From Ruditapes philippinarum (Eukaryota), in assembly GCF_026571515.1 (NCBI RefSeq), contig NW_026853246.1, positions 1-64,000 on the forward strand: a stretch of 64,000 nt of DNA, in the 5' to 3' direction. The notes beneath the pieces were generated by a model. That model was not told the DNA's origin, ran no database searches, and saw nothing but the letters and a program-made list of their open reading frames with translations. Position numbers and translations under genes: made by a program. Shown here piece after piece: positions 494 to 63,583 of this stretch (positions are counted from its first letter, which is position 1; the number at the start of each line of letters is the position of its first letter).

Positions 494-2051
494 TTATTTG
501 TCAGGCTGCCAGCAATATGCGTTTGAAACCTTGCCATTGGTGTCGTCGAAATGAACATCCGCTTGACATTGTTTCTGAAATTAATTTAAAAAAATCTAGA
601 CGTGATCTGGTCACGAGGAGGAATTCTGAAAGAAATTATACTTTCTATCTATAAGATTTTTATTGTTTTAACGCAACGGTTATTTTCCTGCTGTATTTTC
701 TATAAATATTTTTTAAATTGTGTTATTTCTTATAATTTGATACTTTGTACTGTCAACTTAAGAACAATTGTCTAGGAACGTTTTTACTACATTTATGTGA
801 AGAGCGTGATGTTTCTGCCCTACAACATATAACGCGCATGCGCGAAAAAACCTTATTCCGACCAGTTCACGAATGGCATCGAGGAAAGATTTATATCACA
901 CTATGGAATCATACATGTATTAAATTATGATTAGAAATAGCGATCCATGAAAAAAAGGTTAGTCATTGGTACTAACACTCCACACAATTTTTGAACGATT
1001 TGTATTTACTTGTACACAGTTTGAATGATAATATTTTGCAATGCATTTTAAATGAAGATTTGACCAGCATAAATTATTAAATGGTACAGGAGAAAATGGT
1101 TCTTATAATTAACATATTAGAAAACATACAGAAACATACTTAAAATAATCATAATAAACAAACAAACTTGCACTACATATAAAATATAGTACTATTATAT
1201 AAATAAAAAGAGTAAAATGCTAACATACCAATATGCCATATTGACATCTAGCTTTAAATATAACCCGGTATTCCTCATACGGAACTTTGGTCTGTAGGGA
1301 AAAAAATACTTTTAAAACACAGTATTAATTCGCACTTTTGTAGACATCTTAAGATTACACGGGATAATTCGTGCTGTCTATTTTTATTGTTGCTCTGTAA
1401 AAACAAAGCATTTGGTGACATTGTACATAATTGGCTACTGAGGACGTTAATTATGTACTTACGAAAATAAATACCAATATGCTTCAACAAGTTATAACAT
1501 AATTATTGTAGACTTAAAACGTCTTTTCATTACCAAAATTTATCTTAACAACGATGGTTGCAATTTATTTCTGTTATTTCTGGTAGAAGAAATAAAAATA
1601 GAAATAACATGTTTAAATTTTTGTTATTTATCATAAAATCTGTGCATTACATATAAAAAGACAATGATTCTTATTTCGGTCAAATTATTTTCATTAATAC
1701 ATATACATGTCTTGCCATACTTCATCGTTACAAGGTGGAAAAATACAGTCTTCTGTTGCATATTTATATTTCTAAATTGTCAAAGGGTCAGTTTGCAAAG
1801 AAGTATGCAATTTCATCTTAATTATATAAAGTTTATGTAAGTATTTTATTTTAAAATAAACGTCTTACCTTTACATTTGTCCATGCTTTTAATAGGCTTA
1901 TATATTCAACTTCAAGAAATTTAGCAGCCGTACTTGCAGCTAAAATTGCCCTTTTTAGCGAAACAGCAACTGGTTTCCATATTGTCTCAGGCATACATTC
2001 AACACCAACACCCAATAAACATAGGACGCTTACGAAGATTGCAATTTTCAT
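494..2051 (-). CDS. G1: secreted cystatin-fold-like protein, 108 aa, 3 exons (2051-1869, 1291-1229, 574-494)
   Basis: ATG at 2051; donor AAG|GTAAG at 1869; acceptor CTACAG|ACC at 1291; donor TTG|GTATGT at 1229; acceptor TTTCAG|AAA at 574; TAA at 496-494; both introns phase 0. Spliced: MKIAIFVSVLCLLGVGVECMPETIWKPVAVSLKRAILAASTAAKFLEVEYISLLKAWTNVK/TKVPYEEYRVIFKARCQYGIL/KQCQADVHFDDTNGKVSNAYCWQPDK*. Hydrophobic signal peptide; all three exons paralogous to G2 and G3. Confidence 0.88.
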
Positions 2052-2114
2052 TTTAAAGATAAACGTGTTTAAACTAGGAAAGCTGAATGGAAATTACAAA
2101 AGAAAGGACACATC

Positions 2115-6535: not shown

Positions 6536-8663
6536 TCAATATGCGTTGTTTTGTGCTTTTGCTTCCTCGATAGCCTGCCAGCAGGATGCGTTGTAAACCT
6601 TACTGGTGGGGCCGTGAAAATACACATCCGCTTGACATTGTTTCTGAAATTAATGTAAAAGCTATATATATCTTGCCATGGTGTAAAAGTTGTTTAAGAA
6701 GACAAATTACATGTTCATTTATGTCGTTACTATGGGATCTTGTATTAATTATTTACCGAGAAACAAAATTAGCTCAAACAATCCAAGAAACGAAATATAC
6801 TGTATCAGAACCAAAATGTTTTACTTTGTAAAGAAAGACACCTGAAATAATTTATTAATGTTGCTCGACAGATAACAAAAACATAACTTATCAATGAATA
6901 ATTGTATATTGTGTACTCACTTGTTACGCAAAAAAAGTGATAATAGGTCAAACAGTATTATGCTTTATATCATACCATGAATTCATACATGATATTACAA
7001 ATATGCATATCCATAAAGAGAAATGGTAAGTAATTTGTATAGATAATATTCCATAAAATAGTTCAATGACGATTTGTAAAATAGAAATAATAACGGGAAA
7101 TAATAGTGCGGGATATGATGGTTCTTTGTTTTTAAGCAGAACTCATAGATAATCATTCTATGCTAGATTGATGATAGCATGTCATTATATAACCCTAAAT
7201 CCAACAAATAAACCAACAAACTTTCACTACATATGAAATATAATACAATTAACAATACTTGAGAGGTAACTTTAAACATACCAATATGCCATACTGACAT
7301 CTAGCTTTGAATATGACCCGGTATTCCTCTAGTGGATATTGAACCTGTAGAAGAAAAAATGATTTAAGTTTAAAATAAAATACTATTTCGTTCTTGAGTA
7401 CAAACTTTAACATGATGGGTATGGAACTTGAAGAAAAGTTTCCATGCCTAAGAGGTTGATCTTTTGGGTGGAAATATTCGCTCAACGTAAAAGTTTCACA
7501 ATTCGACTTTATTGTACCTTTGTTAGCGCAATGCGTTTGCACACTTGGTATGTTATGATAAGAAACTCTTTTTCCAATACAAATACTTGATTATCTAGTT
7601 TAACTCTTAACTTGCTCAAAATCTAAAATCTACTGGACAAACTTGTTCATTGTTGTTTAAGAAATATACAAACGGGTTGTAACTGACTGAGTAGTTAACA
7701 GTGCAGACTCGGATCAGACGGAACAAACAATTGTATCAGTTACGGTAAGCAGCTTAACAGATAAACGTTTTAACAAAACAAATACAAAGAGAAAATATAT
7801 GTTAACTATGTACTTATGGATATAATTGGTACTAACTTGCTTCATGACAGATATTTAATATGGTAGACAATAATTGTTATATTTTTCAAACGTCTTTTCA
7901 TTACCTTATTATATTTTTCAAACGTCTTTTCATTACCAAAAATCATCTTGAAAACAATTGTAGCAATATTTTAATGTACTGAACGATATAACAATTAAGA
8001 AATGAGAATTTTAAAGTCTTGACTTTTATCATAAGAGAACTGTACGATACAAACCGAAAATGGTCGATATTTTGGTGTTATGATCTTTTAAAAGACATAT
8101 GAGCTGCGCAACGGCAAAAACCAACATAGTTCGTTTGCGACCAGCATGGATCCAGAAAAATCTGCGCATCCACAAAGTCTGATCAGGATCATTGCTGTTT
8201 GCCTACAAACTCTATTACAAGAAGAGAAACTAATAGTGTAAATCATTGATCTTGATCCACGCACTATGCTGGCTTTTGTCAAGACACGGTTCATATATGT
8301 TTGCCATACATAAAAGTTATTGTTACCAAGTGAAAATTATTACACTCCTTCTATAACATATGCATATTTCTATATTGCAAAAATGTCAGTTTGTAAACAC
8401 GTATGCAATTTTATCTAATTTATATGTTGCAGTGTTTTATGATCAAAAAGACTTACCAGCACATTTTCCCAAGCTTGTAACAGGCGAATATAGTCAACTT
8501 CTAGATGTTTAGCAGCCGTACTTGCAGCTAAAATTGCCCTTTTATGCAAAACAGAAACTGGTTGCCATTTTGTCGTCGGAGGAGGTACCGGTGGAGGTAC
8601 CGGTGACGATTCAACACCAACACTCAATATATAGAGGACACTTACGAAAAGTGCTAGTTTCAT
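6536..8663 (-). CDS. G2: secreted cystatin-fold-like protein, 125 aa, 3 exons (8663-8457, 7344-7282, 6643-6536)
   Basis: Canonical phase-0 GT-AG junctions at positions homologous to G1. Spliced: MKLALFVSVLYILSVGVESSPVPPPVPPPTTKWQPVSVLHKRAILAASTAAKHLEVDYIRLLQAWENVL/VQYPLEEYRVIFKARCQYGIL/KQCQADVYFHGPTSKVYNASCWQAIEEAKAQNNAY*. TATA-like CATATAAA at 8732-8725. Confidence 0.88.
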
Positions 8664-16577: not shown

Positions 16578-18603
16578 TTAACCGAAGTATTGTGCTTTTG
16601 CTTCCTCGGTAGGCTCCCAGCAGGATGCGTTGGAAACTTTGCCGGTGAAGCCTTGCAAAAGAACATCCGCTTGACATCGTTTCTGTAATTAATTTAAACA
16701 AACTGTGTTTATTTCTCCATCATGTGTTGTTTGTTTAAGAAGACATATTACGTATTCCATTATGTGGTAACTATATTGTACTTACTCGTATAACTAACCA
16801 AGAAACAAAAATTAGCTCAAACAAAGAAACGAAATATACTGCATCAGAACAAAAATGTTTTAATGTTAACAATGACACCTGAATTTAACTTATTAATGTG
16901 TGTCGAAAGCTAACAGAAGCATAACTTATGAATGAACAATTGTATATTGAGTACTTGTTACAAAGATACTTCAGACGACAAAAGTGATAATAGATCAAAC
17001 AGCCTCAGGCTTTATATCATACAAAGAATTCATACATGATATTAAGTAATTAAATGATTTTTGATATACATTAAGAGAAAGTGTTATGTGCCATAAATAG
17101 TTCAAAGGTCTTTTACTACACGGTCTACATGAAAAAGTTGCATGACGTATTTCTAGTAAGAAATGATAAAATGGTGCAGAAGATAGCGTTTCTTTGTAAG
17201 AGGCAGATCACATACAGAATCATACTTTGATTGGTTGATAGCCTGTCATTATATGATCCTAAAGTCCATCAAATAAACCAACAAACTTTCACTACATATG
17301 AAATATAATACAATTAACAATACTAAAGAGGTAACTTTTAACATACCAATATTCCATACTGACATCTAGCTTTGAATATGACCCGGTATTCGTCGTTTGG
17401 ATGTTGAACCTGTAAAAGGTATAATGAATTAAATTCCAAATATTTTAATATTTGGTTTTTCATTTTCAGTACAAATTTTAACATGAGTATTAAACTGAAA
17501 GATAAGTTTCTATGCTAATGAGTTTGGGCTTTCGGGAAGAAATATCTCTGTGAACACAAAGCGTTAGAACACTTGACCTGTTAAGAAAGAAACTCTTGTT
17601 GCCAATACAAATCCATCACCATCTATTCTAACTTTTGTCACGCTAAATATGTAAAACTTGACAACCTGGACAAACATATTCATTGTTTTTAAGAAATTCA
17701 TAAACAGCATGAACTGAATGAGTTTTTACAGCGCAGACTATGGTAAGATGTTGTGGTAAGCAGCTTCACAGATTGAAGTTCTAACAAATCAGTTTACAAG
17801 GTGAAAATATATGTTAACTATGTACTAATATATATAAACATATCAACATGCTCCGTGACAGGTATTTGATATGGTAACAATATTCGTCATATTATTTCAA
17901 ACGTCTTTTCATTACCTTGTTATGTTTTTCAAACGTCTTTCATTACAAAAAAAATCTTTAAACAATTTAGCAATATTATTAATGTACTTATCTAGACGAT
18001 ATAAAAGTTAAGAAATAAGACTTTAAAATGCTTGACTTTTATCATAAGAGAAATGTACGTTACAAACCAAAAGTGTTTCCTATTCTGGTGATATGATTTT
18101 TTCAAGACATATGAGCCGCACCATGAAAACAACATTATGCGTTTGCGACTAGCAAGGATCCAGACCAGTCTGATCAAGATACTTGTTGTTTGTTTACAAA
18201 CTCTATAACAAGAAGATATACAGCTGATAGCGAACATTTATTCATCACACGGCTCATATATGTTTGCCATACACAAAAGTTATTGCTACTAAGTAAAAAT
18301 TATACACTCTTTGTATAACATATGCATATTTCTAAATTGCTTCAATGTCAAAGTATGCAATTTCATCTAAATTGTATTTGTCATTTTTCTTATGATTAAA
18401 AGAAAATAACTTACCTCCACATTTACCCATGCTTGTAACAGGCTGATATAATCAACTTCCAAAAATTTAGCAGCCGTACTTGCAGCTAAGATTGCTCTCT
18501 TTGCCAAAACAGAAATTGGTTGCCATTTTGTCGTCGGAGGAGGTGAAGATTCAACACAAACACTCAATAAATAGAGGACGCTAACGAAAAGTGCTACTTT
18601 CAT
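16578..18603 (-). CDS. G3: secreted cystatin-fold-like protein, 118 aa, 3 exons (18603-18415, 17409-17347, 16682-16578)
   Basis: Canonical phase-0 junctions. Spliced: MKVALFVSVLYLLSVCVESSPPPTTKWQPISVLAKRAILAASTAAKFLEVDYISLLQAWVNVE/VQHPNDEYRVIFKARCQYGIL/KRCQADVLLQGFTGKVSNASCWEPTEEAKAQYFG*. TATA-like element at 18672-18665. Confidence 0.88.
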
Positions 18604-24760: not shown

Positions 24761-26007
24761 TATAAGACCATTACTGTCTAGAGCCTTGAACTTCACCCGG
24801 TATTCATCAGTATTTTGCTTTGGCTGAAAGACAAAATATGTGTAAATATGGTATTCATTTTCTACAAAGAACTCGAGTAAAATAAGTAATGCCTCATTAA
24901 ATAAAAAATGCGCGTAAAAATTAATAATGCTCGAGTGAATTAATTTAAGTTTGCATAAAATAACTTAATAATGGTAAAGTAAAAAAATGATGTTTGAGTA
25001 GAATAATGAATGCTGGAGAAAAATATGCAATGCTCGAGTAAAACATCTCATGTGCGATTAAAATAACTACATACGAGTACATAGCATAACATGATTATGT
25101 AAGTTAATGATCCAGATTTAAAATATTTTAAGTATTTATTAGTGTAAAAATATTTATTTCAAGAATATTTGGGTATTATCATTTACAATGACAACACGTA
25201 TAAAAGAATACGTTCACATTAAATTGAGGACATTTTACTAAGCTATAAAAGTAAAAAAAATGTTAAGATACGAATTTCACTTTTGCTAAAACAATATGTT
25301 ATTTTCAGTATGTCATTACAGACAAAACAGAAATTTTTTTTTCGTATAATATGTGTGTCCAACAGACGGGTTACATGTTGTCGCTTACAATTTTAAAAGA
25401 AAATCGTTTATTCTATAACATATAGTATCTCTCAACAAACAGTCAAATACAAATTACCATGGTCACATGAGAAAAAAGAAACAAATAAGTCATGACAACA
25501 ATGCACGGTTGTTTCTAACAAATGTTGGAGTAAAATTACCAATGCCCGAGTAAAATTACTAATGTTCGACGAAAATAACTAATGCTCAGGTAAAATAACT
25601 TATGCCCGAGTACATTTTGATTTTCTGTCCTACACAACTACAAGAACTGCTTACTGGTTAAGCAACAACATCATAATTCTAATAAATATATGCACTTTGT
25701 AAACTATTAAAACATATGTGAAATTTATCTCAGATATAAAATATTTTCATTTAAATATATGCCTTAATTAACATAATAACTTTGTGAACAAATAAAATAA
25801 GATAATTATGATAAGATGACATACATTTATCCTTTCTTGAGCTGAAATCATGGCTTTGAATGTCACGCCTAGTGCTTCTGCTGCAACAAAAGCTGATCCG
25901 AGAGCCCTTCTTGACTGTATGCGTATATCGCGCCATTCAGTATACGGTGGTGGCGCAACAACAAAATTTAACATCAAAATTACACTTAAACAAACTTTAA
26001 GCTTCAT
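24761..26007 (-). CDS. G4 exons 1-2 (26007-25825, 24823-24761): secreted family member; exon 3 tentative at 20722-20633
   Basis: MKLKVCLSVILMLNFVVAPPPYTEWRDIRIQSRRALGSAFVAAEALGVTFKAMISAQERIN|GTATGT ... TTTCAG|PKQNTDEYRVKFKALDSNGLI|GTAAGT. Exon sizes of 61 and 21 codons are identical to G1; EYRVxFKA is conserved; TATAAATA at 26096-26089. An alternative in-frame ATG lies at 26022. Confidence 0.82.
24870..25612. repeat. Two degenerate 20-21-bp minisatellite patches (consensus AATGCTCGAGTAAAATAACT) in G4 intron 1
   Basis: Units are visible at 24870-25080 and 25521-25612. Confidence 0.7.
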
Positions 26008-27738: not shown

Positions 27739-28335
27739 AGTTTCACCGGTATTGCATGTAGCTGTAAACTGTACCCGATATTCAGCAGTCCTTGGCCTCG
27801 GCTAAATGAGAGAGAGGAAAAAGAAAATTAAAATATTGATATAGGGCAACTAAAAAAACATGGCTAATTGGTTTCGCAATTACTTGAACGACATGTTCAT
27901 ATCTTTTTGTTTTGTAAAGGATCATTTTCATCTTTAAAATGTGGTCGAATAGCTAATAATAACATTAATTTAGTACTGTTTGTTTTTTGGTTTTATGTCA
28001 CATCGACACAGTATAGGTCATATCGCGACGTTCCAGCTTTACTGGTGGAGGAAGACCTCAAGTTCCCTTCATATTACACATAAAAACATACATATATATG
28101 AAATGCATCTTACATATTAAATCACTTACCAAAAATGCAAAAGAAACCGTACATTTTTCCTTTCGTGAGCTGAAATAATATTTTCAAATTTCACACCAAG
28201 GAAATCTCCAGCAAAATGAGCTGATCCGACAGTCCGTCATAGTTGTATGCTAACCTCACGCCATTCTGAAGATGGTATTGGTGCAACAACAAAATGTGTC
28301 AGCAATATTAAGCTTAAACAAGCTTTAAGTTCCAT
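27739..28335 (-). pseudogene. G5: G4-like paralog with an in-frame TGA (exons 28335-28153, 27801-27739; exon 3 not found)
   Basis: MELKACLSLILLTHFVVAPIPSSEWREVSIQL*RTVGSAHFAGDFLGVKFENIISAHERKN|GTACGG ... TTTAG|PRPRTAEYRVQFTATCNTGET|GTAAGT. The TGA at 28239-28237 aligns with Arg in G4 and G6. TATA box at ~28430-28421. Confidence 0.82.
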
Positions 28336-34200: not shown

Positions 34201-34859
34201 AAATAATTTTATATTTATATTTATTGTTTGATGGAATTTAGATAAATAACTTTAATCATTAACAACCTTACCTCTCCATCCGGAAAACTGACAAAAAAGT
34301 AAACATAATAACGAGCAAATGAGACGTCTGGCTGCAAAAAAAAAGATTACAATGAAGTGAAATAATTTTACGACTAGAACATTCGGAAAAAGATATACCC
34401 AAACATCTTTATGTATTGAAATAGTTCTGTATTTACAATTAGGTCATGTGCTTCATTATGTATGCATTTCTTTCTCACATTTAAACACAAAGCGTCTGGT
34501 AATAACTTACATGTACACAGATAAATTAACGAATTACAATTTCACATTTCATAATTTTGGTTACAAAAATATATTACAAATGTATGGTCGTAATGTATTA
34601 TATCAAATAATATGTTTATCAATCATAAATATGATCTGTATCATCAAAAAGGTGTGTATAAAACATAGACACTTACAGGTTGAACTTGTGCAAAAGCTTT
34701 CAACATTCCTGTATATGTTCCTCCAAGAAAAGCAGATGCTTCTATAGCAGATCCGATAGTTCTTCTCAAACCTATACTAACTTCTGTCCACTGTTGACAA
34801 AGTCCTGGCACGACATTTAAAACAATGAGCAGCAGCACAAAAGCCTTTGATGAATTCAT
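31222..34859 (-). CDS. G6: secreted cystatin-fold-like protein, 108 aa, 3 exons (34859-34677, 34331-34272, 31305-31222)
   Basis: Canonical phase-0 junctions. Spliced: MNSSKAFVLLLIVLNVVPGLCQQWTEVSIGLRRTIGSAIEASAFLGGTYTGMLKAFAQVQP/PDVSFARYYVYFFVSFPDGE/IRMCKGIVLWRFEPTFVRTTERARCGL*. Exon 3 has C4, W10 and C25 exactly as in G9. Confidence 0.85.
32147..34128 (+). mobile_element. HINE/Pearl-like (Helentron-associated) element(s) in G6 intron 2, with a nested palindromic element
   Basis: Starts AAACAAGAG. It has internal degenerate core repeats (CCC(C/T)GGGG.CGGGGCCAA..TTGA), TGACCTTGACC, a (GACG)n microsatellite at ~34068-34080 and a CGGGCGTATTAAAA end. The family is inferred from recalled bivalve elements. 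Confidence 0.55.
32830..33358 (+). mobile_element. Palindromic-ended non-autonomous element (possibly Crypton-type)
   Basis: Starts TATAGAGGATATT; contains a ~150-bp hairpin centred on ATATTTTCACGAGTGGCGTAGCCACGAGTGAAAATAT; ends CAATAAA. Confidence 0.7.
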
Positions 34860-40145: not shown

Positions 40146-42231
40146 CTAACATCCAAGGTTATATACCGTTGTATTGCTGGGATTTGCAGCCCAAAGGACA
40201 TCTGCATGACATTCAAAACCCTGAAAAATAAATTAGAGTTTTTTCAAAAAAAAAAAAAGGAATTATGATAAGTAAACGCTTGAGAAAGGATTCAATGATG
40301 CATATCAGTTCTGATATGTTGAATATTTTAATATCAATAATATAAGCTTATATAATATCTGTTTTGGTTTTGGAGGAATTTTATTTGTTATATGTATGTG
40401 ATCTTGATCCCGTAAAAAGATAATGTAATGCGTTTATGATTATTTTTACAGTTATACGAAAATCAAGGTCAATTTTTTAGGGGGGGGGGGTCATTTTTTT
40501 TATTTTATCTTTGTTGTTTTTTTTTTGTTGTTGTTTTTTATAATTTTTTTTACTTTTTCTCTTGTATATAAATTGTGCAAACAACTCGAAAATTTTCACT
40601 GATTTACCTTTATGAATCATTACTTCATTACAAAATTTAGACAGCGGAAAAATACACTGTTAAATAAGTTTTTAACAGAAAACAAAAACTTTATTTTCAT
40701 TTCAATTAGTATATATTTGTGAGGGGATAAAAGCTACCTACCTTTCCATTTGGAAGAGCGGTAAGGAACGAGACTCTGTATAAATCCCATTCAGGAACGC
40801 CCTGCAACAGTAAAAGTATTTTGAATAATCAAGAAACACTGTTGGCTCTGATACTATTATGTTATATTTAAAGATAAAATAGCCCCAACTCAATATAAAC
40901 ATCTAAACATTTATAATTATATGTGTAAATACACTTTATATATTCACATTTATGATATACATGTTCTAACCATGAGGTATGCTTGGGTACATCTAAACCC
41001 CTGAATCAAATATCACATTGCAACAGTCACACTTCATAAAATCATTAAAAGTATGCCAGGTTTTAGGGTTTAAACGTCTTTCATTGTTTAATATATTTTA
41101 CATTATAGTATTATTATTACATTACATTTTTTGTCATATATAACGTGACTTAAAGCGGCCTTCAGTTTTTATTTTTTTCTTGTGGAAAAACAACTCTGTG
41201 TTATTTCAAAATAAGTATTTCAGTAATTTTATCTGGGGAAAAGTGCATCATAGCATTGTAAGGTCTTCTTAAAAACAGCGTCCCAAAAGTTATCTATAGG
41301 CCGCCAGGGACGTTCGTTTCTAAAAATAGTAGATCGGGAAATAAATAGTCAGCTTAACTAATTTACATAAAGAGAAGTCCGCTAGAATACAGGTATCGAG
41401 AGATTTCCTTATTGTATATTTTATCGCCGGCAAGTTTCATTTTCAACCTTAATTTTTTTATTTGACATTTATATGAAAATATGAAACATTTGATCTAAAA
41501 ATAACCTATTAAAAATCTTTAGAAAAGCTGAAGGCCGCTTTAAGTTTACACAAACGCGCCCATTTCTGTCATATCGTAATGGAGAGCTATTGATATAAAA
41601 GTATCCTTTCCTGAAAAAACAATAGACACTTTTTGAAAAAAGATAAGCACCAAGGTATATTTTTAATATAGGAATAACGAAAAATCATGAACTATTTGTT
41701 TAGGTGCTTCACTTTATTTCTTTATGTTCTTTTTCAAATGATTAAGCATGCATACGTGTTTTTCTGTTATGATTCCTGATGATAAATTTCTATATTGAAA
41801 ATACAAGAATCTTTAATTAATATATTTTTTAAGTCTTTATTTTTGATATTTCAAAGATTATCAAGTTATGGTCCTAAAGAATGTTTAAAGTTTTCGTAAT
41901 ATGCCTTTATCATTTGATCAGTATCAATAATCATATGTTGATGGTATGCAAGAACAATCAAAGTTGATCGGCGATAATAATTAACATGAATTGATTGATA
42001 GATCAATGTATATATATAATATCTAAATGGTGAACTTACATCTCTTCGCTTGAAACCTGTCAATTTCTTTGTCAAACGCCCTCCAACATGATCTGTTGCA
42101 AGTTTAAATGAATCATCAATTTTTGGTGATGAAAGTGGTAACGCATCCCATCCGTTCATATCGAACCTAAAGCACGTGAAACATGATAATATGCCACAGA
42201 AAATAAGCACATTCAATCCTGATATCTTCAT
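40146..42231 (-). CDS. G7: secreted cystatin-fold-like protein, 108 aa, 3 exons (42231-42040, 40801-40742, 40220-40146)
   Basis: Canonical phase-0 junctions. Spliced: MKISGLNVLIFCGILSCFTCFRFDMNGWDALPLSSPKIDDSFKLATDHVGGRLTKKLTGFKRRD/GVPEWDLYRVSFLTALPNGK/GFECHADVLWAANPSNTTVYNLGC*. Clearly paralogous to G8 and G9. Confidence 0.88.
41154..41539. mobile_element. 386-bp MITE with TTAA target duplication (Kolobok-type ends) in G7 intron 1
   Basis: TTAA|AGCGGCCTTCAG ... CTGAAGGCCGCT|TTAA. An RR terminus with a TTAA target duplication fits Kolobok rather than piggyBac (CC terminus). Confidence 0.82.
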
Positions 42232-49718: not shown

Positions 49719-52504
49719 CTAGTACTTGAAATTAAGCTGGCTGGTCGGAAGACAACCTGTGTTGAAGACTGTCACGTTGAAGGGGTTGAAGATCCACACA
49801 ACATCTGAATGACATTCATATTCCTAAAAAAGACAATGTATTTCTTTAAGAAAAGAAAAAGAGGTCTTCGTCTATCTATCCATCTATTTATCTTTCATTA
49901 ATGTCAAACCCCTCGTGAGGACGTAGACATGTCCGCGCGTCAAAATCGCAAGAAAGTTAAAAAGAGTTAAGAACAGTAAGAAGAATAATAAATATGTTTA
50001 AACCAGGGGGTGGCGGGAAAACTAGGGTGAGATATGTTCAATGCAAGCTATGGATTCACTGAACTGCTCAGGAGTAGAGAGTAGAGCAATTTATATAAGT
50101 TATACAGTCCAGTCTAGGAAAGAAGGACACTTTTTTTTAAAGCGAATAACCTATAACACAGGATATGGCCATGGTGTGATGTTCGGGAGGGGTATCACAT
50201 ATTCTTCTAACGGGATAGCAACAAGACCATAGTGGTCTAAGAGTTCTAGTGTTCTAGTTTTTTCAGCTCTTAAAGTATCATTAATTTTAATACTTTCAGT
50301 ATAGAGGATTTTACTATGACTATGGGTGTGAGAGCCCTGCTCGATCCATTACTGTCATGAACAGACTTGCGGGGTATTTTAAGGTGGACATGGGGTGATC
50401 CCGTTGAGCTTATGGTTATCTCCCGTTCCGTGCGTAATAAAAGATGAAAAATAACAAAAATTATCTAAACACACATTTTGGTGGAAAGGCAGAAGTGTTT
50501 TAACTTGAATTTGAGTATTTGTTATGAAATTGTCAAGTTTGAAACGATAACAAATACGAAATACGAGAGTCAGAAATATGTTTAAATAATCAGTAATGTC
50601 AGTTCAAACTGGAACAAGTTAAATGTTGATGCCGCACATCAAAGACGCCGCCAAATGATGTGACCAGTCAAATAGCATTGAAAATCGCTCTCTATTACAG
50701 TTGAATATCCGAAGCACAAATCAATTGTTTCTCCATTTTCTTGGTATAATAATACTTGTGAGAAAGTAGAACCTAATGAATAAATTCACAAAATTATGCC
50801 AGGTCTGAAATTCTTAAATGTTCGTCTGTTGCGACAAAGACTGAAACGTCTGGTCGAATCAAAATGAATTGGATAACGAAAAAATGAAATGATTGGTATA
50901 CTTATAATAAATTCAACACAATATGTGCCGAGAATAAACCCATTTAAATATTGGTACGAATTGCATAATGTTCGAATGATTTTTAGGACATCTGCAGTGA
51001 TCTCCCCTTACAGGCCGAAGCGAAACCGGTTTGTTGTACTTTCTTAACAGTTGAGTGAGAACCGCCTCTCTGATAGTGGGCGTGGTTTAAACTTTGTAAC
51101 CTTGTAATTTAATGATTCAACAAGTGATATTGATCAAAGTTGTCCTGGTTCCCTTCTACCCCGTCAACGAAGACTATAAGCAGCATAATATCAAATTTAA
51201 TATGACAATTTAAGGCGGAGCCGAACTTCAACAGAGGCGAAGCAAATGAAGTAAGTGACACTGCCTCAGTTGTCACCTCTCTCCACGGTTAAGTTTTAGA
51301 ACGATCGACTATAGACTGGCTCATTGGCACGTTATTTATTATGTAGATAAAATTAGATAATGATGAAAAGAATATGATATTCAAACATGGCACTATCACT
51401 TCAGTTAAACGTTTATTCTAATCCCTTAAAGCTCTGTGACATGTTGTACATCATAAAAGCTATTTTATTAGAAGATTTAAAAACAGTGTGATTTTGTTAA
51501 AACAAAACAAAAACTACACAAAATCAAGTCTAGAATTTCCCCCATTGCTGTACGGACAAATGCATATCTACTAGAAGCCGTTTGCAAGCGGCGTCTAATA
51601 AAAGAGCAATGATTTGAAAGTTTTAAGTGTACGTAAATTGAAAAATAACAGACTTTTTAATTGAATCTTAAAAGCAATAACGTAAACATTTTATTAACGG
51701 AAAGCCATGTCAAATTAAACTTTGTTTTACTGTCAAATAGTTGATGAAACTTTTTCTCACCTCTCCTTTGAAATAAGTTCCAATGAAAGATACTCTGTAT
51801 AGGTCCCAATTGGGAATATTCTGGAAAAAAAAAGAGTTTAAAATCATCAATTTTTTAATGAAAGCATCAACACATTTCAAAAGTTGTCAAAATAATAGAA
51901 AATACAAATGTTTTCAACCTCGACAAATGTTCCAATATGTGTGTGTAAAAACAATTTAGTTTTTTTGCAACAGTAAAATATTTATTTTTCAAATATAAAG
52001 ATTAAACACTTCTTTCCGAATATGAAAATGATACACAATTTGATAACATCTATCTACATTGTTGAAATGTCCGTTAAATCACTTTCTAGTTTCTTGTTAT
52101 AAAGATGTTTTCTTCTTGTATGTTCCTTAAATAATGTGTCAACAAACGTAGAAAGTATATGCAAGTTTTTTAATGCACTTTTTTATAATCATATTCGGGT
52201 CATTTTGTGGTGAGTCGCGTCGTTGAAGTAATATTTTTCCTACCCGTATATATGAAATTGATATGTAAAATCCTTTTTATCAAAAACTATCAAAGAAACA
52301 ACTTACTTCCTCCAATTTGAATGCTGTGATAGGTTGTTTTAACTGACCAGCAAGATGTTCCACGGCCAGGTTTGTTGAATCTTGTACCCTATTGTTATCC
52401 AATCTCAATGCTTTCCATCCATTAAGATCGAAAGGAACGTGAACAGATATGCACAAATAAATCAAACTGAATAAAACGAGCACTCCTAAACTTGACTGAT
52501 GCAT
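49719..52504 (-). CDS. G8: secreted cystatin-fold-like protein, 120 aa, 3 exons (52504-52307, 51820-51761, 49823-49719)
   Basis: Canonical phase-0 junctions. Spliced: MHQSSLGVLVLFSLIYLCISVHVPFDLNGWKALRLDNNRVQDSTNLAVEHLAGQLKQPITAFKLEE/NIPNWDLYRVSFIGTYFKGE/EYECHSDVVWIFNPFNVTVFNTGCLPTSQLNFKY*. Confidence 0.9.
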
Positions 52505-55867: not shown

Positions 55868-56664
55868 TGTTTATATTTGTCCGATAGTTTATACATTTAT
55901 ATAAATTAGATGTTAGAAATGGAATTTGAATGTTATAAACATATGGAAAAAAAGAAATAAACACACTTTTTTCAATATACGCCATGCTTAACTTTTATGT
56001 GAAATATTTTGTTTGAATTTGAATTTGCATTGAGGTGCACAATTCGTGTTTTATATATGTCACCTTATTGACCGTTCACGAATTAAGGGAGATGGTGTGT
56101 AAGTGGCCGAAAAGATCAGTAGGTAGAGCCGCAGTACGGTATTCCGAATGTATCGGTTTCGACTGCATATTTCCCTCGCCCTGTGAGTCTGTGATATATA
56201 GATGATTTACAGAGTATGTCATATTGTTTTTACTTTATAGTGCAAATTTTATTATTATTGTTGTTGTTGTTGTTGTTGTTGTCGCTGTTGATGTTATCGC
56301 CATCTTCGTTATCATCTTTATAATTATCATTATAAATTTTGAGTTATTAATCACGTGCCATAATGTCATTAAATGTCAGCAAAACAAGAAAGTGACAGAG
56401 AATATATGCTCATTACTTTCTAATATTTCATGAATATGACAAGCACGTGAAAAACAATAAGAAATAAAAGACGTCAATCTTTTGTCACAAAAATTATGCA
56501 CTGTGTTTCATTATCATAAAATAATGTATTTTAATAATATTAATTTGATTTGAGATCAATGACTTGTTATTATTTTATGTTTTTCAATTGCAATGAGTGT
56601 TAGTCTTGAAACTGTTAAGAATTGTCAAAACATATGAAATGAGTTGAGTACATGACATATACCG

Positions 56665-56695
56665 TCTCTCTCTCTCTCTCTCCCCCCTCTCTCTC

Positions 56696-56746
<51 letters not shown>
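56665..56746. repeat. (CT)n microsatellite
   Basis: Direct reading; a (GTT)n tract also lies at ~56258-56290. Confidence 0.95.
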
Positions 56747-56747
<1 letters not shown>

Positions 56748-57892
56748 GCAATTTTATTTGTATAGCAAGTTTATATATATTTGTTAATATTTACTAAATA
56801 ATTATTTACTATATCAACCTTCCAGGTATTTAATACATAACATTTTTTTTGTTGCTGTTTTTTTGTTATTAATTTTAAGAGTATAACTGAACTGTCAAAA
56901 TGATGAACAAGATGTTGTGATTCTTCCTTAAATACATACAATGTTACAAGTTTTAACATGAATGCACGCGTATAAACAATGTAATTTTGACAGGACTTTT
57001 CAGTCATAGTTGATTGACTGTCTGTTCTCATGATTAATTACCAAATACAACGCTTGAAGTTGATGTGAATGGACCTAGTCTTGAATAATTTCTTTGCAGC
57101 TTTTATTCGTCACAAGCGTAGCATAAAAGTCATACTTTAAAAAGGTTGCCGTTTGTATATAAATTACAATGATTACTCAATAGAAGCTATCTCAAAATGG
57201 ATTGTCAAAATGAGTTGTCTTCTATATTGCGTATTGCCACCCATCAATATGTCTTTCTGTAATTTTAAACGTTTCTTTACTTACAACTTTTAAAAGGTGT
57301 AATTGAACGTTTGCTTGCAATTTGTGTTTGTTCGCATAACACTAGTTTTTATATACAATAACCATGCCTTCTGACATAAGTATGTAACTAAAACATCCTC
57401 CAACTAACAATAGACTTAACCGAATATAATTTCAAACAAGTACTGGTATTAGCATTTCCACATATTCTAGATGTCGCTGTTCAAAAAACCTGTTATTCGA
57501 CACACATTTTGTCGCGAAATAGACTCTTTGCTTATGTTTATTCTTTCAAGAAAAGATTTCCGTAAATTCTTTACTCAGCAGGAGGCCACACACAGATTTC
57601 GAGCTTTATACGTGAACATTGTATTTCAATTCAATCTAAAGCTAATCCGACAAAAATATTGCGACTGGCGTACTACGTTGCGCCAATGTTTTAGGCCATT
57701 CGTCGTCCATATTGTGATCAGATGGTATTCAATTCTTGATTCTGATTTGCTTGAAACAGGCGGTGTACAGATGAAATTGGTCAAATCTTCATAATTAAAT
57801 TGCTTTATTCGCATTGCGATAAACTTTATCAGACAACCTATAATACTTTTCAAAATATAATGAATTATGTAATACTTTTACATACTACACAT

Positions 57893-58643: not shown

Positions 58644-61600
58644 TTAATAACCTTTTGTAGCAGTTTTCTCCTTTGTAGGGGCTGGTCCCTTGTAAGATGG
58701 AGGAACAACCTTTGCATTTGGAACATATTTTGGTTGATATGAAGGAGCCGGAGGAGCTACTGTAGGAAATGGAGTAACATAATTTTTACCCTGAGGTGAA
58801 GCTGTTTCAGAGGGTATGTCAAGGCCAAATAGCTTGTAGATAAGCTCTGCTTTGAAAAGGGCATCATCATACGCAGGGGCCTTTGTCGGTAACGATCCGT
58901 ATGTTGATTTGCTAGAGTCTAATTTCTTGTACGTTGTCTTTGCCTTTGTTTGGATTGGCTTATAAGATTCTTTTTTAAACTTTGGTGCTAGATTGTAAGT
59001 GTTTTTCGTTGCTGTATTTGATTGGTATTTTATAGTTTTCACTGAATCTTTGTACTGTACTGCTTTGCTTCCTGTTTTGTCATAAGTGGTTGTTTTAACA
59101 CCAGGTTCCTTGTTTGTCGACTTAACACTTTTGACGTAACTAATCGGCGATTCAGAGTAGGCGATTTTATTATTATTATTATTCATATTATTATTATCGA
59201 GTGCACTATTTGGACCAATCTTGTAAGATGATTTCACTACTGGAGCATAATTAACTGGTGTGTCTTTATTTGTTACAATCTTAGTTTGAGTACTGTCATA
59301 TGACTTTGATTTTATTACTGGGGCATAATTGATTGGCGAGTTTTTATTTACTGGTGCCATATTATCAGCTGCAGCATTTGTTCCGGTTGACGGATATGTC
59401 GATTTCACTGCAGGAACATAATTGATCGGCGTTTCTTTATTTATTTGCGTTTTGTATCCAGGTTTTGTGTCTGTTGATTTATAAGAAGACTTCGTTGCGG
59501 AAGAATAACTGACTGGAGAATCATTAATTGCAAGATTTTTGTCATTAGTCAAAGTCTTTGTTACCGTTTGTGTGTACGTTGATTTCGCTGCAGGGACATA
59601 CTTGACTGGTGCACCATTATTTCCTGACGTTTTATAATCTTTTGTATTTTTGGTATCAGCAGACTTGTACGTGGATTTCACTGCCGTGGCATAGTTGACT
59701 GGCGAATCTTTAACTGACGGGTTTTTGTCATTAGCTTTACTCTTTGTGTCCAAAGGTGTGTAAGATGATTTCGCCGCAGGAACATATTTAATTGGTGAGC
59801 CAGTTTTTCCCGACTTTTTATAGTCTGTTGAATTCTTAGCGTCAGCTGACTGGTATGTCGATTTCACAACTGGAGCATAGTTGACCGGCGAATCTTTAAC
59901 TGCTGAATTTTGATTACTAGTTGAACTTTTTATACTGTATGTCGATTTCACTGTAGAGACATGTTTAGTTTTTGAGCCATAATTTCCTATTGGACTTTTA
60001 GTGTCAATTGACTTGTATGTCGATTTAATGACTGGAGCATAATTGACGGGTGAATCTTTAATTGTAGGTTCTTTACTATTTGTTGAACTTTTTGTCTCAT
60101 TTAACGGGTATGATGGCTTAATTGCAGGGTTATACTTGACTGATGGGTACTTTGCTGAACTCTTGGTGTCGATTGACTGGTATTTCGACTTAACTGCTGG
60201 TGCATATTTCACTGGCGAATCTTTGACTGCAGGTGGTTCGTAATTAGTTGAACTCTTTGTGTCTGTTGATGCTTGTGTCTGTTTAATTGCGGGAGCATAC
60301 TTGATTGGCGACTCTTTATTTCCTGAACTTTTATAGTTAGATGAAGTCTTAGTGTCAGTTGACTGGTATGTCGGTTTTAATTCTGGAGCATAATTGACTG
60401 GGGAATCCTTGATTGCAGGCTTTTCATAATTATTAGAACTTTTTGTGTCAGCTGACTTGTATGTCGGTTTTGCTTGAGATGCATATTTTGTTGGTGAGCC
60501 GTTATTCCCTGCTGTTTTCTTGATTGATGTTGTCTTTGTTTCCTTTGAGGGTGCTTCATATTTAATCGGCGAATCTTTATTAACTGTTGCTTTATCATTT
60601 GCACCCTTTGTGTCAGTTGCCTTGTACATCATTTTCTCTACAGGAAGATAATTGATTGGCGAGTCGTTCTTCGCTTGTACTTTCTTACCAGATTCAGCAT
60701 TTACTGGGAGATATTTGATGGGCGATTCTTTACTTACAGCTGTTTTGTCATATGCAGGTTTCGTCTCAACAGACTTATACGTTGTTTTTATGATTGGGTT
60801 TGTTTTGCCATTTTCTTTGCTATATTGTTTTGCTGATCTATAGCTTAATTTATTGATGGTATTAGTATTTATACCTGGGTTATTATTACCTGGGATATAT
60901 TTCGTAGGTTCTTTGACGTTCTGTTTCGTTGTTGATGAGCTCTTATATGTTGGCTTATCATACGTGGGTTGTTTGTGTGTTGGTTTACTTGTAACCGGGG
61001 TCATGTAGTCAGATGCTTTACCTGAGTAAGATGTTGACAAATGCTTATTGATATATGATAGTGGTACACATCCTACATTAAATACTGTAACACCAGGAGG
61101 ATGGTCCGAAATCCATACCACATCTGCATGACATTCATACTCCTGTAACAAGAAAAGACACCGCTTGTTTATAAACTTATCGAGCTGGTTCGTTATATCA
61201 TTTCGTTACTTCTGTTTACAGATTACCATAAACTAAATAGATTACCATAAACATTTAGTTAATTTTTTTGTGTAAGACACATTCTTTAGAATAATCCTTT
61301 GGAACTGGAAATAATATTAGTAAATTGCTATTTATAAAGATCCGAGCTAGCTATTACATATTACATAGCTAATGAAAGGAAGTGGTGGTCAAGTGGTTAA
61401 GTTGTCTGCATCTCTCAATCAAGGACTTGTTTGTTCGAGTCATTCTGAGTCAAATATTATATTTGAAGTTATTGTCATTTATATGGCTAAATTTACAGTT
61501 TTATCACTGTATATATACCAACCCCGTAGATGTTTTATCCATTTTGTAATTTTTATTTAGTGTCTCAGCCTGGAATAAACCTTGTAATTTGAAAATTTGA

Positions 61601-63583
61601 CTAGGTATTTTTTATAATAAAATAAATTAAACTCTTAATGTGACATCAGCAAATATTGGACACATGCTGCTGTAAATGATCGACACAATCTTTTTGAGAA
61701 TAAACAGAAGTAAGAAAAGGAATGACATTTCATTAAAAAAATATTTTCTATTTTATCATTTTGAAATTTTCCGGAGAGAAAATTATCTGACCATCTTTTA
61801 CATATGTTGCCTTTCGGCAATACAAGTACAGTTTAGTAATTTGGTATTTTTGTATGGAAATTAAAAATACTACTTTGTTTACAATTTTCTACTTTTTGTG
61901 AAAATCAATGCACATTCAGCGTTACTTTATTACAAGTGAAAAGCACGTTACATTGTTCTAAAACCACTTTGTAAAGGTTATAAAACTATTGCCTTTCTAA
62001 AGATAAAAACAATGTTTCTGAGGCGTAATGTGCCTTTTAACTTTACCTCTTTTTTCATGAATATTCCTAGGAATGACAACCTGTATAAATCCCATGACGG
62101 AACATTCTGAAATAAAAAAGGAATAAAATGAACATTTTTGCAACATAACATTATAATAATTGTGGTTTTTACTTTTTTTCTCTGGAAGTCTTTTATTTCT
62201 TATGTTTCTATTGTTTTATAATATCGACAATTACAAGTGGGTACAACGTTTTGGTTAGCTTTAATTTACGATTGATCGGTTTGATATTATAATAGTACAT
62301 GTATTATACTGCATTATTTACCTTAAAATGAACATCATAATTAATATCATATAAATAAAATAACGTCACTTTCATACAATCGCTGTTTTGTTATTGTTAA
62401 AATTTCGACCATAAATGAAAATGATATATTCATACCTTAAGTTGCCTCCTTGGAGGGCCTCTTTATAAAGATTGCATTGTATATTTATTAAAAGTGAGAG
62501 TTATTTTCGTATTATTAGAGCATACTTTATTCAAACCTTACTCTGCGTAATACCTTAAAATTTTCAGTTTTAAATGTAGACAACAACTTTGAACTCTTTG
62601 AGGGAAATTTTCATAATCGATTCCAATTTTTGACGGTCCTATCGTGTTAAACATATGTAGGCTTTGTAATGCAGTAATCAAGTTCAACAATTTAAGTTTG
62701 GACAAAGCATAGTACTGGTTGGTTCCAGGAATGGATTCGAAAGTGTGTCTATAAGCTTATAGCTTCCTACACAAACTAAAATAAATTCTGTATAAACCAA
62801 AACCAACCAAGCGAAACTTGTATGATAAAATAAGATTTATATTTCATTTGAAAATGTTTTATTGTATCATACTTTGACAGTGACATTGCAGTCACTTTAC
62901 ACCATTGAAATGAAACAAATTGAGATAAAGCCGTTTTCCAAATATATGAACTAATCTTCGTTTATTTTTATTGCATTAATGACTTAATTATAATTAATTT
63001 CTGTAGCCTTTTCTATCCTTTTTTACTAAGGTATCATCTATTTTTAAGAGTGTTTTTAACTGTGATACATATCAGAGTATTAATAACAATGTTTTATGAT
63101 CTTTTTAAATAAGTTACATCTCAAAGTATAAATAGTCATGATTTGAATTTTATATAATTAGAATGCTAATATGTTTTGGATATTGGAAATTTCCATTTCA
63201 AAGTTAATAAGGTTATAAGAGTAAGTAATTGAATGCTGATAATTTTGATTTTGAATCGTACTGTCATTTTATCGCGCTCAAGAGATTACAACAGGTTCAA
63301 ATACTTACCTTATTAAAACGATCCATTGTATCACTTATCTAAATCAATATAAATGTTATTTAACTTTTTATTGTAGTCCACTTACTTCAATCCATTTAAA
63401 GGCAGTAATTGGTTTTATTAGTTTCCCTCCAATATGTTTAGCAGCTACTGACATTGAATCCGATACATTTTTGTCTGTTAGTGAAACTGGCTTCCACCCG
63501 GTCAAATCAAAAGGAACATGAACGCACACGGAACATGTAACCAAAATACTAAATACCAGTACTCGTTTAACAGACAGTAGCAT
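58644..63583 (-). CDS. G9: secreted 918-aa protein with an N-terminal cystatin-fold-like domain and a ~800-aa K/T/S/P/Y-rich repetitive tail; 3 exons (63583-63386, 62106-62047, 61142-58644)
   Basis: MLLSVKRVLVFSILVTCSVCVHVPFDLTGWKPVSLTDKNVSDSMSVAAKHIGGKLIKPITAFKWIE|GTAAGT ... TTTCAG|NVPSWDLYRLSFLGIFMKKE|GTAAAG ... TTACAG|EYECHADVVWISDHPPGVTVFNVGCVP... The 2499-nt terminal exon is open to TAA at 58646-58644. Several AATAAA signals lie on the minus strand at ~58484-58459. The N-terminal domain is closest to G8. Confidence 0.92.
59130..60740 (-). repeat. Coding tandem repeat: ~18-19 units of ~31 aa (93 nt), consensus SP(V/I)(N/K)YAPAVKSTYxSxDTKSSxNYxxxxxK(D/E)
   Basis: [S/T/A]P-[VI]-[NKS]-Y anchors recur at mostly 31-aa spacing in the translated ORF. 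Confidence 0.9.

What the first reader, a model, noticed from the sequence alone, without database searches (positions are those of the whole stretch)
494..63583. Hidden tandem array of a divergent secreted cystatin-fold family that has lost the papain-inhibitory motifs
Seen: nine same-strand gene units plus relics, each with a signal peptide, a 61-69-codon exon 1 and a 20-21-codon exon 2; the seven complete genes also have a two-Cys exon 3 and two phase-0 introns. Established: type-2 cystatins (e.g. human CST3) have three exons. Intron 1 lies at the QxVxG loop, and exon 3 begins K-A-F-C with the disulfide Cys pair at exon codons 4 and 24. G7 and G8 have exactly C4 and C24, and G6 and G9 have C4 and C25. 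The N-terminal xGW, the long helix, the A(F/W)x strand and the YxVxF strand follow cystatin topology. G6 keeps KAFAQV (cf. RARKQI) and G8 has VVWIFNPF (cf. VPW). No copy has QxVxG, loop 1 is 3-4 residues longer, and the appendage with the first disulfide is absent. Inference: a lineage-specific expansion that has repurposed the cystatin scaffold, probably annotated at best as uncharacterised proteins.
Basis: partly seen in the sequence, partly recalled or inferred. Interest (0 to 1): 0.9.

Follow-up and report, generated by a model that had tools for sequence, protein, structure and literature searches.

The report
Clam shell-matrix cystatin-fold gene array
Nine tandem genes of the Manila clam encode small secreted proteins, already catalogued as relatives of 'insoluble matrix shell protein 2', that are predicted to have the cystatin fold but lack the motifs cystatins use to block papain-type proteases. 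This gives a known orphan shell-protein family a fold; it is not a hidden new family.

Summary
The window (Ruditapes philippinarum, RefSeq contig of 136,796 bp) carries nine minus-strand units with canonical phase-0 introns, exon 1 of 61-69 codons and exon 2 of 20-21 codons. Seven units have a two-Cys exon 3.

Support for the gene models:
- G3 and G6 match RefSeq proteins exon for exon.
- Both G8 junctions appear in transcript contigs from two studies.
- G5 has an in-frame TGA, and G4 has lost its exon 3.
- G9's exon 3 runs on into a 797-residue tail rich in Lys, Ser, Thr, Pro and Tyr.

Two AlphaFold2 models (core pLDDT 93-98) match only cystatin-superfamily structures at the top (Z 9.3-11.9). 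The ESM Atlas agrees. A weak sequence link (E 1.6e-5; hhalign 77%) leads to a bacterial protein of tandem cystatin/SQAPI repeats. QxVxG and PW are absent, and Pfam finds nothing.

The array is not hidden. Its relatives are named 'insoluble matrix shell protein 2-like', after a shell-matrix protein known from proteomics.

My reading is a venerid-clam-specific, non-canonical cystatin-fold family deposited in the shell matrix, with variable L1 and L2 loops. Biochemical function is untested. The new part is the fold assignment, not the genes.

The parts
494..2051 (-). G1, complete 3-exon gene: e1 2051-1869, e2 1291-1229, e3 574-494
   Evidence: boundaries, AG/GT, phase 0; homology
6536..8663 (-). 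G2, complete: e1 8663-8457 (69 codons, extra Pro-rich stretch after the signal peptide), e2 7344-7282, e3 6643-6536
   Evidence: the related RefSeq protein P0030 matches e3 at 100% and e2 at 95%
16578..18603 (-). G3, complete: e1 18603-18415, e2 17409-17347, e3 16682-16578; equals RefSeq XP_060579373.1
   Evidence: (63/63, 21/21 and 34/34 residues identical to P0026)
24761..26007 (-). G4, truncated unit: e1 26007-25825, e2 24823-24761; exon 3 is missing
   Evidence: the copy on contig C5017 (P0002, named IMSP2-like) has an exon 3 just beyond the point (window 24532) where the 92% alignment to the window ends
27739..28335 (-). G5, pseudogene or null allele: e1 28335-28153 with an in-frame TGA, e2 27801-27739; no exon 3 found
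   Evidence: the intact counterpart P0012 (named IMSP2-like, contig C11778) has Trp where the window has the stop
31222..34859 (-). G6, complete: e1 34859-34677, e2 34331-34272, e3 31305-31222; equals RefSeq XP_060579366.1
   Evidence: (61/61, 20/20 and 27/27 identical to P0005)
40146..42231 (-). G7, complete: e1 42231-42040, e2 40801-40742, e3 40220-40146 (Cys at exon codons 4 and 24; stop directly after the second Cys)
49719..52504 (-). G8, complete and transcribed: e1 52504-52307, e2 51820-51761, e3 49823-49719
   Evidence: joints 51820->52307 (486 skipped) and 49822->51760 (1937 skipped), both CT..AC on the + strand, in contigs of runs X1 and X3; exon bins have word depth 10^3 to 6x10^4, introns about 0-20
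61038..63583 (-). G9 head (cystatin-like domain): e1 63583-63386, e2 62106-62047, first 35 codons of e3 61142-61038 (Cys at 4 and 25)
58644..61037 (-). G9 tail, in the same exon and frame as the head: 797 residues of degenerate ~31-residue repeats. K 15.8%, S 13%, T 11.5%, P 9.3%, Y 8.2%; pI 9.75; no Cys or Trp
   Evidence: single copy in the genome; no database protein of 458-1456 aa matches it. The junctions of this gene were not tested with RNA

Best explanation
The window holds most of a tandem array of a venerid-clam-specific gene family. Nine units lie in the window and at least two more divergent ones lie further along the same contig. Each gene encodes a small secreted protein of about 85-100 mature residues. 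The predicted fold is a short N-terminal strand carrying an invariant Trp, one helix, and four long antiparallel strands, with a disulfide joining the last two. This is the cystatin fold, and the family is probably a very divergent offshoot of secreted type-2-like cystatins. It keeps their three-exon layout and C-terminal disulfide but has lost the first-disulfide appendage and the protease-binding motifs QxVxG and PW. The family is the one NCBI names after insoluble matrix shell protein 2. The inferred mechanism is that the proteins are secreted in bulk, presumably by mantle epithelium, and built into the insoluble organic matrix of the shell. There the rigid scaffold would present two hypervariable hairpin loops (L1, L2) as a binding surface for other matrix components. 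Canonical inhibition of papain-type proteases is unlikely. In G9 the same module is the head of a long basic tail rich in Lys, Tyr and Pro, a composition suited to cross-linking into the matrix or periostracum. Shown here: the array, the gene models, G8 splicing and transcript abundance, the predicted fold, and the absence of the motifs. Inferred: homology rather than convergence, mantle origin, presence in the shell, and the binding role.
For: Array and gene models. RefSeq identity of G3 and G6. G8 junctions and high transcript depth in two independent studies. Fold: two AlphaFold2 models (pLDDT 81.5 and 82.3; core blocks 93-98) with order E-H-E-E-E-E. VIA-align against 48,161 PDB chains puts only cystatin-superfamily chains in the top 13, and 14 of the top 16 carry a cystatin-superfamily title. 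Z is 9.3-11.9, with cystatin F at 11.9/11.4, and falls to 7.9 or less below rank 16. Foldseek's top hits are Affimer/Adhiron, fetuin-B, phytocystatins, latexin, cystatin E/M and C, and monellin. In the ESM Atlas, the second and third feature hits are SQAPI/cystatin clusters (0.89 and 0.88; 190 and 185 of 256 features shared), and all ten structure rows are cystatin-type. Sequence link: the exon-1 profile hits P0024 at a whole-library E of 1.6e-5. P0024 is a string of cystatin/SQAPI repeats (PF16845 1.4e-20, PF00031 9.4e-20). hhalign gives 76.6% probability and P 2e-5 over strand 1, the helix and strand 2. IMSP2 link: names of P0002, P0012, P0006, P0032 and P0034-36; IMSP2_RUDPH is listed among biomineralisation proteins in a venerid mantle transcriptome (PMC9100110). 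Loops: mean pairwise identity is 0.15 in L1 and L2 against 0.35-0.53 in helix and strands, and indels fall in L1 and the C-terminus.
Against: No Pfam or PDB sequence match to cystatins. The sequence link is weak, covers only the exon-1 half, and gains from summing nine repeats. The models rest on an 18-sequence alignment from two species. I did not see the IMSP2 sequence itself, so the link rests on NCBI's '-like' names. The tissue of runs X1 and X3 is coded and unknown, and two RNA runs (X21, X23) show no G8 exon reads. The domains are not acidic (pI 4.7-9.8), so direct mineral binding of the fetuin-A type is not indicated. No biochemical evidence excludes protease inhibition by another mode.
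Confidence: 0.6

Rival explanations
1. The proteins are still protease inhibitors, retargeted to another enzyme class or using reshaped loops. They would be stored in the shell matrix or periostracum to protect it from microbial or endogenous proteolysis. Cystatin-fold precedents exist: SQAPI (aspartic proteases), latexin (carboxypeptidase A) and fetuin-B (astacins).
For: The top structural matches include these non-papain inhibitors: SQAPI, latexin and fetuin-B at Z 9.4-10.3. Protease inhibitors are a recurrent class in mantle transcriptomes and shell proteomes (PMC4897951). Fast-evolving loops would fit an arms race with target proteases.
Against: None of the known contact motifs is present. 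No candidate target was identified, and nothing here tests inhibition.
Confidence: 0.25
2. The fold resemblance is convergent, or an artefact of prediction. The family would then be a true orphan unrelated to cystatins.
For: Pfam and PDB sequence searches find no cystatin. A helix packed on a four- or five-stranded sheet is a simple arrangement. hhalign probability is only 77% over 38 columns.
Against: The top VIA rows are cystatin-superfamily members with a clear step down below them. Two models from different subfamilies agree. The language-model search and the profile hit to a Pfam-verified cystatin-repeat protein point the same way. So do the three-exon layout with the first intron in L1 and the Cys pair 18-21 residues apart at the start of exon 3. 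The comparison with CST3 is from my memory.
Confidence: 0.15
3. The family serves immunity rather than shell building. It would be a cathelicidin-like arrangement, a cystatin-like domain with or without a cationic C-terminal part, secreted by haemocytes or epithelia.
For: G9 couples the domain to a strongly basic tail (pI 9.75). An ESM Atlas structure row includes cathelicidin-type cystatin domains. Other IMSP genes (IMSP1, IMSP3) respond to LPS in clam hepatopancreas (PMC7430831).
Against: The G9 tail is an 800-residue repeat, not a short peptide, and no processing site is evident. IMSP2 relatives are not among the genes listed in that study. The family's name comes from a shell proteome.
Confidence: 0.08

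Closest known systems
Insoluble matrix shell protein 2 (IMSP2_RUDPH) and RefSeq 'IMSP2-like' proteins of Ruditapes philippinarum and Mercenaria mercenaria
   Same: Same family by sequence. P0002 and P0012 are about 90% identical to G4 and G5 in exon 1. The Mercenaria proteins match G7-G9 exons at 60-80%.
   Different: The database entries carry no domain or fold. I did not determine which window gene, if any, is IMSP2 itself. G1-G3 and G6 are labelled only 'uncharacterized'.
Secreted type-2 cystatins (cystatin C, F, E/M, chicken cystatin; Pfam PF00031)
   Same: Predicted fold (Z up to 11.9), signal peptide, three exons, a disulfide between the last two strands, and an N-terminal segment ahead of the helix.
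   Different: No QxVxG, no PW, no first disulfide or appendage, no legumain-site Asn motif, no Pfam match. An invariant Trp occupies the N-terminal strand. Inhibition is untested.
Non-inhibitory or retargeted cystatin-fold proteins (CRES, fetuins, histidine-rich glycoprotein, latexin, SQAPI, monellin)
   Same: The cystatin scaffold is kept while the papain-binding motifs are lost or replaced. These proteins are among the top structural matches. From my own knowledge, fetuin-A, spp24 and the latexin-like eggshell protein ovocalyxin-32 are cystatin-fold proteins that reside in vertebrate mineralised matrices.
   Different: They are vertebrate or plant lineages with no detectable sequence relation to the clam family, and most are multi-domain proteins.
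Adhiron/Affimer engineered binders (phytocystatin consensus scaffold with two randomised loops)
   Same: Best Foldseek hit (5ml9_B, 4n6t). In the clam family, too, variation concentrates in the two hairpin loops on a conserved scaffold.
   Different: Affimers are engineered. A binding role for the natural loops is only inferred here.

Membership tests
Cystatin superfamily (MEROPS I25 / Pfam clan CL0121) | Fold: one helix packed on a five-stranded antiparallel sheet, in the order strand-helix-four strands | tested here: met
   Predicted only. Models of P0026 (=G3) and P0006; VIA Z 9.3-11.9 to cystatins; Foldseek; ESM Atlas
Cystatin superfamily (MEROPS I25 / Pfam clan CL0121) | Match to PF00031 or PF16845 above the curated cut-off | tested here: not met
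   No such hit even at E 10, for the exon peptides and for 18 full-length members. The PDB profile search also found no cystatin
Cystatin superfamily (MEROPS I25 / Pfam clan CL0121) | Remote sequence homology to verified cystatin domains | tested here: inconclusive
   Exon-1 profile to P0024, E 1.6e-5. P0024 carries PF00031/PF16845 repeats. hhalign 76.6%, 38 columns
Cystatin superfamily (MEROPS I25 / Pfam clan CL0121) | QxVxG in hairpin loop L1 | tested here: not met
   Absent from all nine units and all 18 aligned relatives
Cystatin superfamily (MEROPS I25 / Pfam clan CL0121) | Pro-Trp in hairpin loop L2 | tested here: not met
   Absent. Most members have a Trp at the end of strand 4 instead
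Cystatin superfamily (MEROPS I25 / Pfam clan CL0121) | Conserved Gly in the N-terminal segment | tested here: inconclusive
   Gly precedes the invariant Trp in G7-G9 and most Mercenaria members, but not in G1-G6
Type-2 cystatins | Two disulfides: one in the appendage after strand 3, one between strands 4 and 5 | tested here: not met
   Only the second is present: Cys at the start of strand 4 and the end of strand 5, 18-21 residues apart. The appendage and its Cys pair are absent
Type-2 cystatins | Three coding exons, with the first intron at the L1 motif and the second three codons before the strand-4 Cys | tested here: inconclusive
   Window side shown: three exons, both introns phase 0, intron 1 at the start of L1, intron 2 two or three codons before the Cys. 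Three exons in CST6 are stated in PMC8070812. The exact CST3 intron positions are from my memory. The only PF00031 hit in this genome is a stefin-type exon and does not help
Type-2 cystatins | Tight reversible inhibition of papain-like cysteine proteases | not testable with these tools
   Needs recombinant protein and enzyme assays
IMSP2 shell-matrix protein family | Sequence similarity to proteins named after IMSP2 | tested here: met
   The IMSP2_RUDPH sequence itself was not retrieved
IMSP2 shell-matrix protein family | Physical presence in the acid-insoluble shell matrix | not testable with these tools
   Needs peptide mapping of shell proteomes onto G1-G9
IMSP2 shell-matrix protein family | Expression in mantle | tested here: inconclusive
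   G8 is spliced and very abundant in runs X1 and X3, and absent from X21 and X23. The tissues of the coded runs are unknown

The most novel reading that the evidence does not exclude
The clam has turned the cystatin scaffold into a natural 'Affimer'. On this reading, a tandemly diversifying set of rigid modules uses two hypervariable loops to recognise different partners (chitin, silk-like proteins, crystal faces or microbial enzymes) within the shell matrix. G9 would tether one such module to a tyrosine-cross-linkable fibre. This would be an independent recruitment of the cystatin fold into a biomineral matrix, parallel to fetuin-A, spp24 and ovocalyxin-32 in vertebrates.
Probability: 0.25. 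Interest if true: 0.7.

Novelty: new variant of a known kind. Interest (0 to 1): 0.5.

Why it matters
Most mollusc shell-matrix proteins are lineage-restricted orphans without a recognisable domain, which blocks mechanistic work. Assigning the IMSP2 family to the cystatin fold makes it testable. Its motifs and gene structure point to descent from secreted cystatins that lost their inhibitory function. The questions become concrete: does it inhibit any protease, what do its two variable loops bind, and does the array's diversification track shell properties or pathogens? It would also add an invertebrate case to the repeated use of cystatin-fold proteins in mineralised tissues. The G9 fusion points to a candidate cross-linkable matrix or periostracum protein. 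No database protein of comparable length (458-1456 residues) matches its tail.

Tried and rejected
- **Pfam and PDB sequence searches.** Pfam scans of all exon-1 peptides, the G9 exon 3 and 18 full-length relatives gave nothing meaningful. A profile search of PDB sequences gave only chance ARID hits at E about 0.2.
- **G8 exon 1 homologue search.** It returned only an ORF call that reads into the intron (P0001). The query's length window (up to 115 aa) excluded the 120-aa full protein.
- **G9 tail homologue search.** Blank, which says nothing about proteins outside 458-1456 aa.
- **PF00031 in this genome.** It found one stefin-type exon on C7325, which gives no information on intron positions.
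- **Literature.** Marie et al. 2011 (the source of the IMSP names) is not held. Searches for cystatin together with shell-matrix proteins, and for intron positions, gave nothing usable.
- **Orphan exons.** No significant 'relic' exons were found beyond G4 and G5.
- **Acidic mineral binder.** Rejected as a general property, because pI spans 4.7-9.8.
- **Joined spliced models.** They were not sent to any search or fold tool. RefSeq proteins identical to G3 and G6, and a Mercenaria relative of G7-G9, were used instead, so G7, G8 and G9 were never folded themselves.
- **Closed or exhausted tools.** Reads were laid on G8, so the junctions of G1, G2, G7 and G9 have no RNA test here.
Full report
**What is in the sequence**

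The window is AT-rich (about 30% GC) and has no N. ORF listing and tblastn show nine similar N-terminal coding blocks, all on the minus strand. They start at about 2.05, 8.66, 18.60, 26.01, 28.34, 34.86, 42.23, 52.50 and 63.58 kb. Translated comparison of the spacers finds two further conserved blocks downstream of most of them.

Reading the boundaries base by base gives canonical AG/GT sites and phase-0 introns throughout:
- Exon 1 is 61-69 codons.
- Exon 2 is 21 codons in G1-G5 and 20 in G6-G9.
- Exon 3 is 24-35 codons and contains two Cys.

The Cys lie at exon codons 4 and 24 in G7 and G8, 4 and 25 in G6 and G9, and 3 and 21 in G1-G3. Exon-by-exon alignments show that all three exons are homologous across the units. 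The invariant residues are a Trp just after the signal-like segment, an Ala near the end of exon 1, Tyr and Phe in exon 2, and the Cys pair.

- G5 has an in-frame TGA in exon 1.
- G4 and G5 have no exon 3 in the window.
- No other significant orphan exons exist.

**Independent support for the gene models**

A profile of the exon-1 peptides, searched against 1.84 billion representative proteins, returned 25 hits. The full-length ones are RefSeq proteins of Ruditapes philippinarum and Mercenaria mercenaria. P0026 (XP_060579373.1) equals G3 and P0005 (XP_060579366.1) equals G6, residue for residue and exon for exon.

The window's contig is 136,796 bp, the same length as the contig recorded for those proteins. 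The genome is therefore the annotated Manila clam assembly.

For G8, transcript contigs from two independent studies (X1, X3) cover the three exons at word depths of 10^3 to 6x10^4, while the introns sit near zero. Both predicted joints are present: 486 and 1,937 bases are skipped, and the ends read GT..AG on the minus strand. Two raw RNA runs from other studies show no exon reads, so expression is restricted to some samples. The tissues are coded and unknown.

**Extent of the family**

In this genome the exon-1 profile finds 19 places:
- nine in the window;
- two weaker, more divergent ones further along the same contig (about 92.4 and 97.7 kb), where Tyr replaces the invariant Trp;
- five on contig C5017;
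- three on contig C11778.

C5017 aligns to the G4 region at 92% identity. Its G4-like gene (P0002) has an exon 3 lying just past the point where the alignment to the window stops. G4 in the window has therefore lost its last exon through a structural difference. G5's intact counterpart (P0012) sits on C11778. I could not decide whether these contigs are divergent haplotypes or paralogous arrays.

A profile search with full-length members found 16 proteins. The named ones all come from the two venerid clams; the rest are unnamed Logan and JGI fragments.

**What the family is called**

Several members are named 'insoluble matrix shell protein 2-like' by NCBI: P0002 and P0012 of R. philippinarum, and five Mercenaria proteins of the G7-G9 type. 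The rest are 'uncharacterized'. IMSP2_RUDPH is a Swiss-Prot entry used as a biomineralisation marker in a venerid mantle transcriptome (PMC9100110). The IMSP names go back to the shell-matrix proteomics of Marie et al. 2011, which is cited in PMC3374290 and PMC4897951 but is not held in the library. The array is thus annotated and tied to a described shell protein, though one without any domain assignment.

**Fold**

I used the RefSeq proteins instead.

AlphaFold2 on P0026 (=G3) with an 18-sequence family alignment gave a mean pLDDT of 81.5. Most core blocks scored 96-98, and the five models agreed. The elements are strand 27-29, helix 35-48, and strands 51-61, 69-78, 84-94 and 97-106. P0006, a Mercenaria IMSP2-like protein of the G7-G9 type, gave the same architecture (pLDDT 82.3).

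The structure comparisons agree with each other:
- **Foldseek against the PDB.** It lists almost only cystatin-superfamily entries: Affimer/Adhiron, fetuin-B, phyto- and tick cystatins, SQAPI, latexin, cystatins E/M and C, CRES and monellin. E-values are weak (0.008-0.15), but probabilities are about 1 and target-normalised TM is mostly 0.5-0.66 against single-domain targets.
- **VIA-align 2 against 48,161 representatives, independent of Foldseek.** The top 13 rows of both searches are cystatin-superfamily chains, and 14 of the top 16 carry such a title. Z is 9.3-11.9; cystatin F scores 11.9 with rmsd 2.1 Å over 84 residues. Below rank 16, Z falls to 7.9 or less.
- **ESM Atlas.** By language-model features, SQAPI/cystatin clusters are the second and third hits (0.89 and 0.88; 190 and 185 of 256 features shared). 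All ten structure rows are cystatin-type.

**Is it homologous, or only alike?**

Pfam and PDB sequence searches see no cystatin. However, the exon-1 profile hit P0024 at a whole-library E of 1.6e-5. P0024 is a protein made of about nine tandem repeats that Pfam recognises as Cystatin and SQAPI domains. hhalign of the family against those repeats gives 76.6% probability (P 2e-5) over strand 1, the helix and strand 2. In that register the family's invariant Ala aligns with the Ala two residues before the repeats' Q-V-V-x-G. The end of exon 1 then falls at the start of that motif.

From my own knowledge (Abrahamson et al. 1990; not checked here), human CST3 has three exons. Its first intron lies at Gln55|Ile56 inside QIVAG. 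Its second lies three codons before Cys97, which pairs with Cys117 twenty residues on. That is the same layout as in G7 and G8. Exon 2 is 38 codons in CST3 and 20-21 here, which matches the loss of the appendage that carries the first disulfide.

I put descent from secreted cystatins at roughly 75-80%, and convergence or a modelling artefact at about 15%.

**Loss of the inhibitory apparatus**

QxVxG and PW are absent from every unit and from all 18 aligned relatives. The N-terminal Gly is present only in part of the family. L1 and L2 are the least conserved parts: mean pairwise identity is 0.15, against 0.35-0.53 in the helix and strands, and length changes fall in L1. The mature domains are not acidic (pI 4.7-9.8). 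G1-G3 and G6 carry a third Cys, which is unpaired if the exon-3 pair forms the disulfide.

**G9**

Its exon 3 begins like those of G7 and G8 but has no stop for 832 codons. The 797-residue tail consists of degenerate ~31-residue units. It is rich in Lys, Ser, Thr, Pro, Tyr and Asn, is basic (pI 9.75), and has no Cys or Trp. It is single-copy in the genome, and no database protein of 458-1456 residues matches it.

An open frame of this length in 30% GC DNA is coding beyond reasonable doubt, and it is contiguous with the head's last exon. The upstream junctions of G9 were not tested with RNA.

**Conclusion**

The 'hidden, uncharacterised' claim is not: this is the IMSP2 family of venerid shell-matrix proteins.

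The most likely working model is a non-inhibitory cystatin scaffold secreted into the shell matrix, whose variable loops bind matrix partners. Retargeted protease inhibition is the main rival. Function, tissue and presence in the shell remain to be shown.

Nothing else of note lies in the window: no Rfam family and no tRNA.

Noticed in passing
window 58644-61037 (-): 797-residue basic repeat tail (K/S/T/P/Y/N-rich, ~31-residue degenerate units) fused in frame to the G9 cystatin-like head. It is single-copy in the genome, and no database protein of comparable length matches it.
   Followed up: partly
window 28153-28335 (-) and 24532 / 20641-20775: G5 has a TGA where the intact copy on C11778 has Trp. 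G4 lacks its exon 3: the 92% alignment to contig C5017 stops at 24532 and resumes at 20775, so about 3.7 kb in the window replaces about 2.2 kb that holds exon 3 on C5017.
   Followed up: partly
G000:C1733:92405-92572 and 97731-97895 (L018, L019), minus strand: Two more divergent exon-1-like units beyond the window, with a signal-like start and Tyr in place of the family's invariant Trp. The array extends to at least 98 kb on the contig.
   Followed up: partly
window 50570-51640 (inside G8 intron 2): A stretch covered on both strands by RNA reads of run X21 at 90-95% likeness, with many loose ends. This looks like a transcribed dispersed repeat, not part of G8.
   Followed up: no
window 5497-5724 and 23445-23690; also 8700-9420 and 18650-19360: Near-identical non-coding blocks shared between the spacers of different units: a dispersed repeat, and the duplicated upstream flanks of G2/G3 and G3/G4. 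They show that the duplications included the intergenic DNA.
   Followed up: no
window 56224-56751: Simple repeats that read as poly-Val and (Glu-Arg)n in ORF listings. They are microsatellite-type sequence, not genes.
   Followed up: no
P0024 (846 aa, JGI metagenome protein): A protein with a lipoprotein-like N-terminus and about nine tandem cystatin/SQAPI repeats, each with a Q-x-V-x-G-like motif. It is the only verified cystatin-domain protein that the clam exon-1 profile reached.
   Followed up: partly
G000:C7325:47551-47649 (L020), minus strand: The only PF00031 hit in the clam genome by the six-frame search: an exon of a stefin-type cystatin with an intact QVVAG. Canonical cystatins therefore coexist with the divergent family.
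   Followed up: partly
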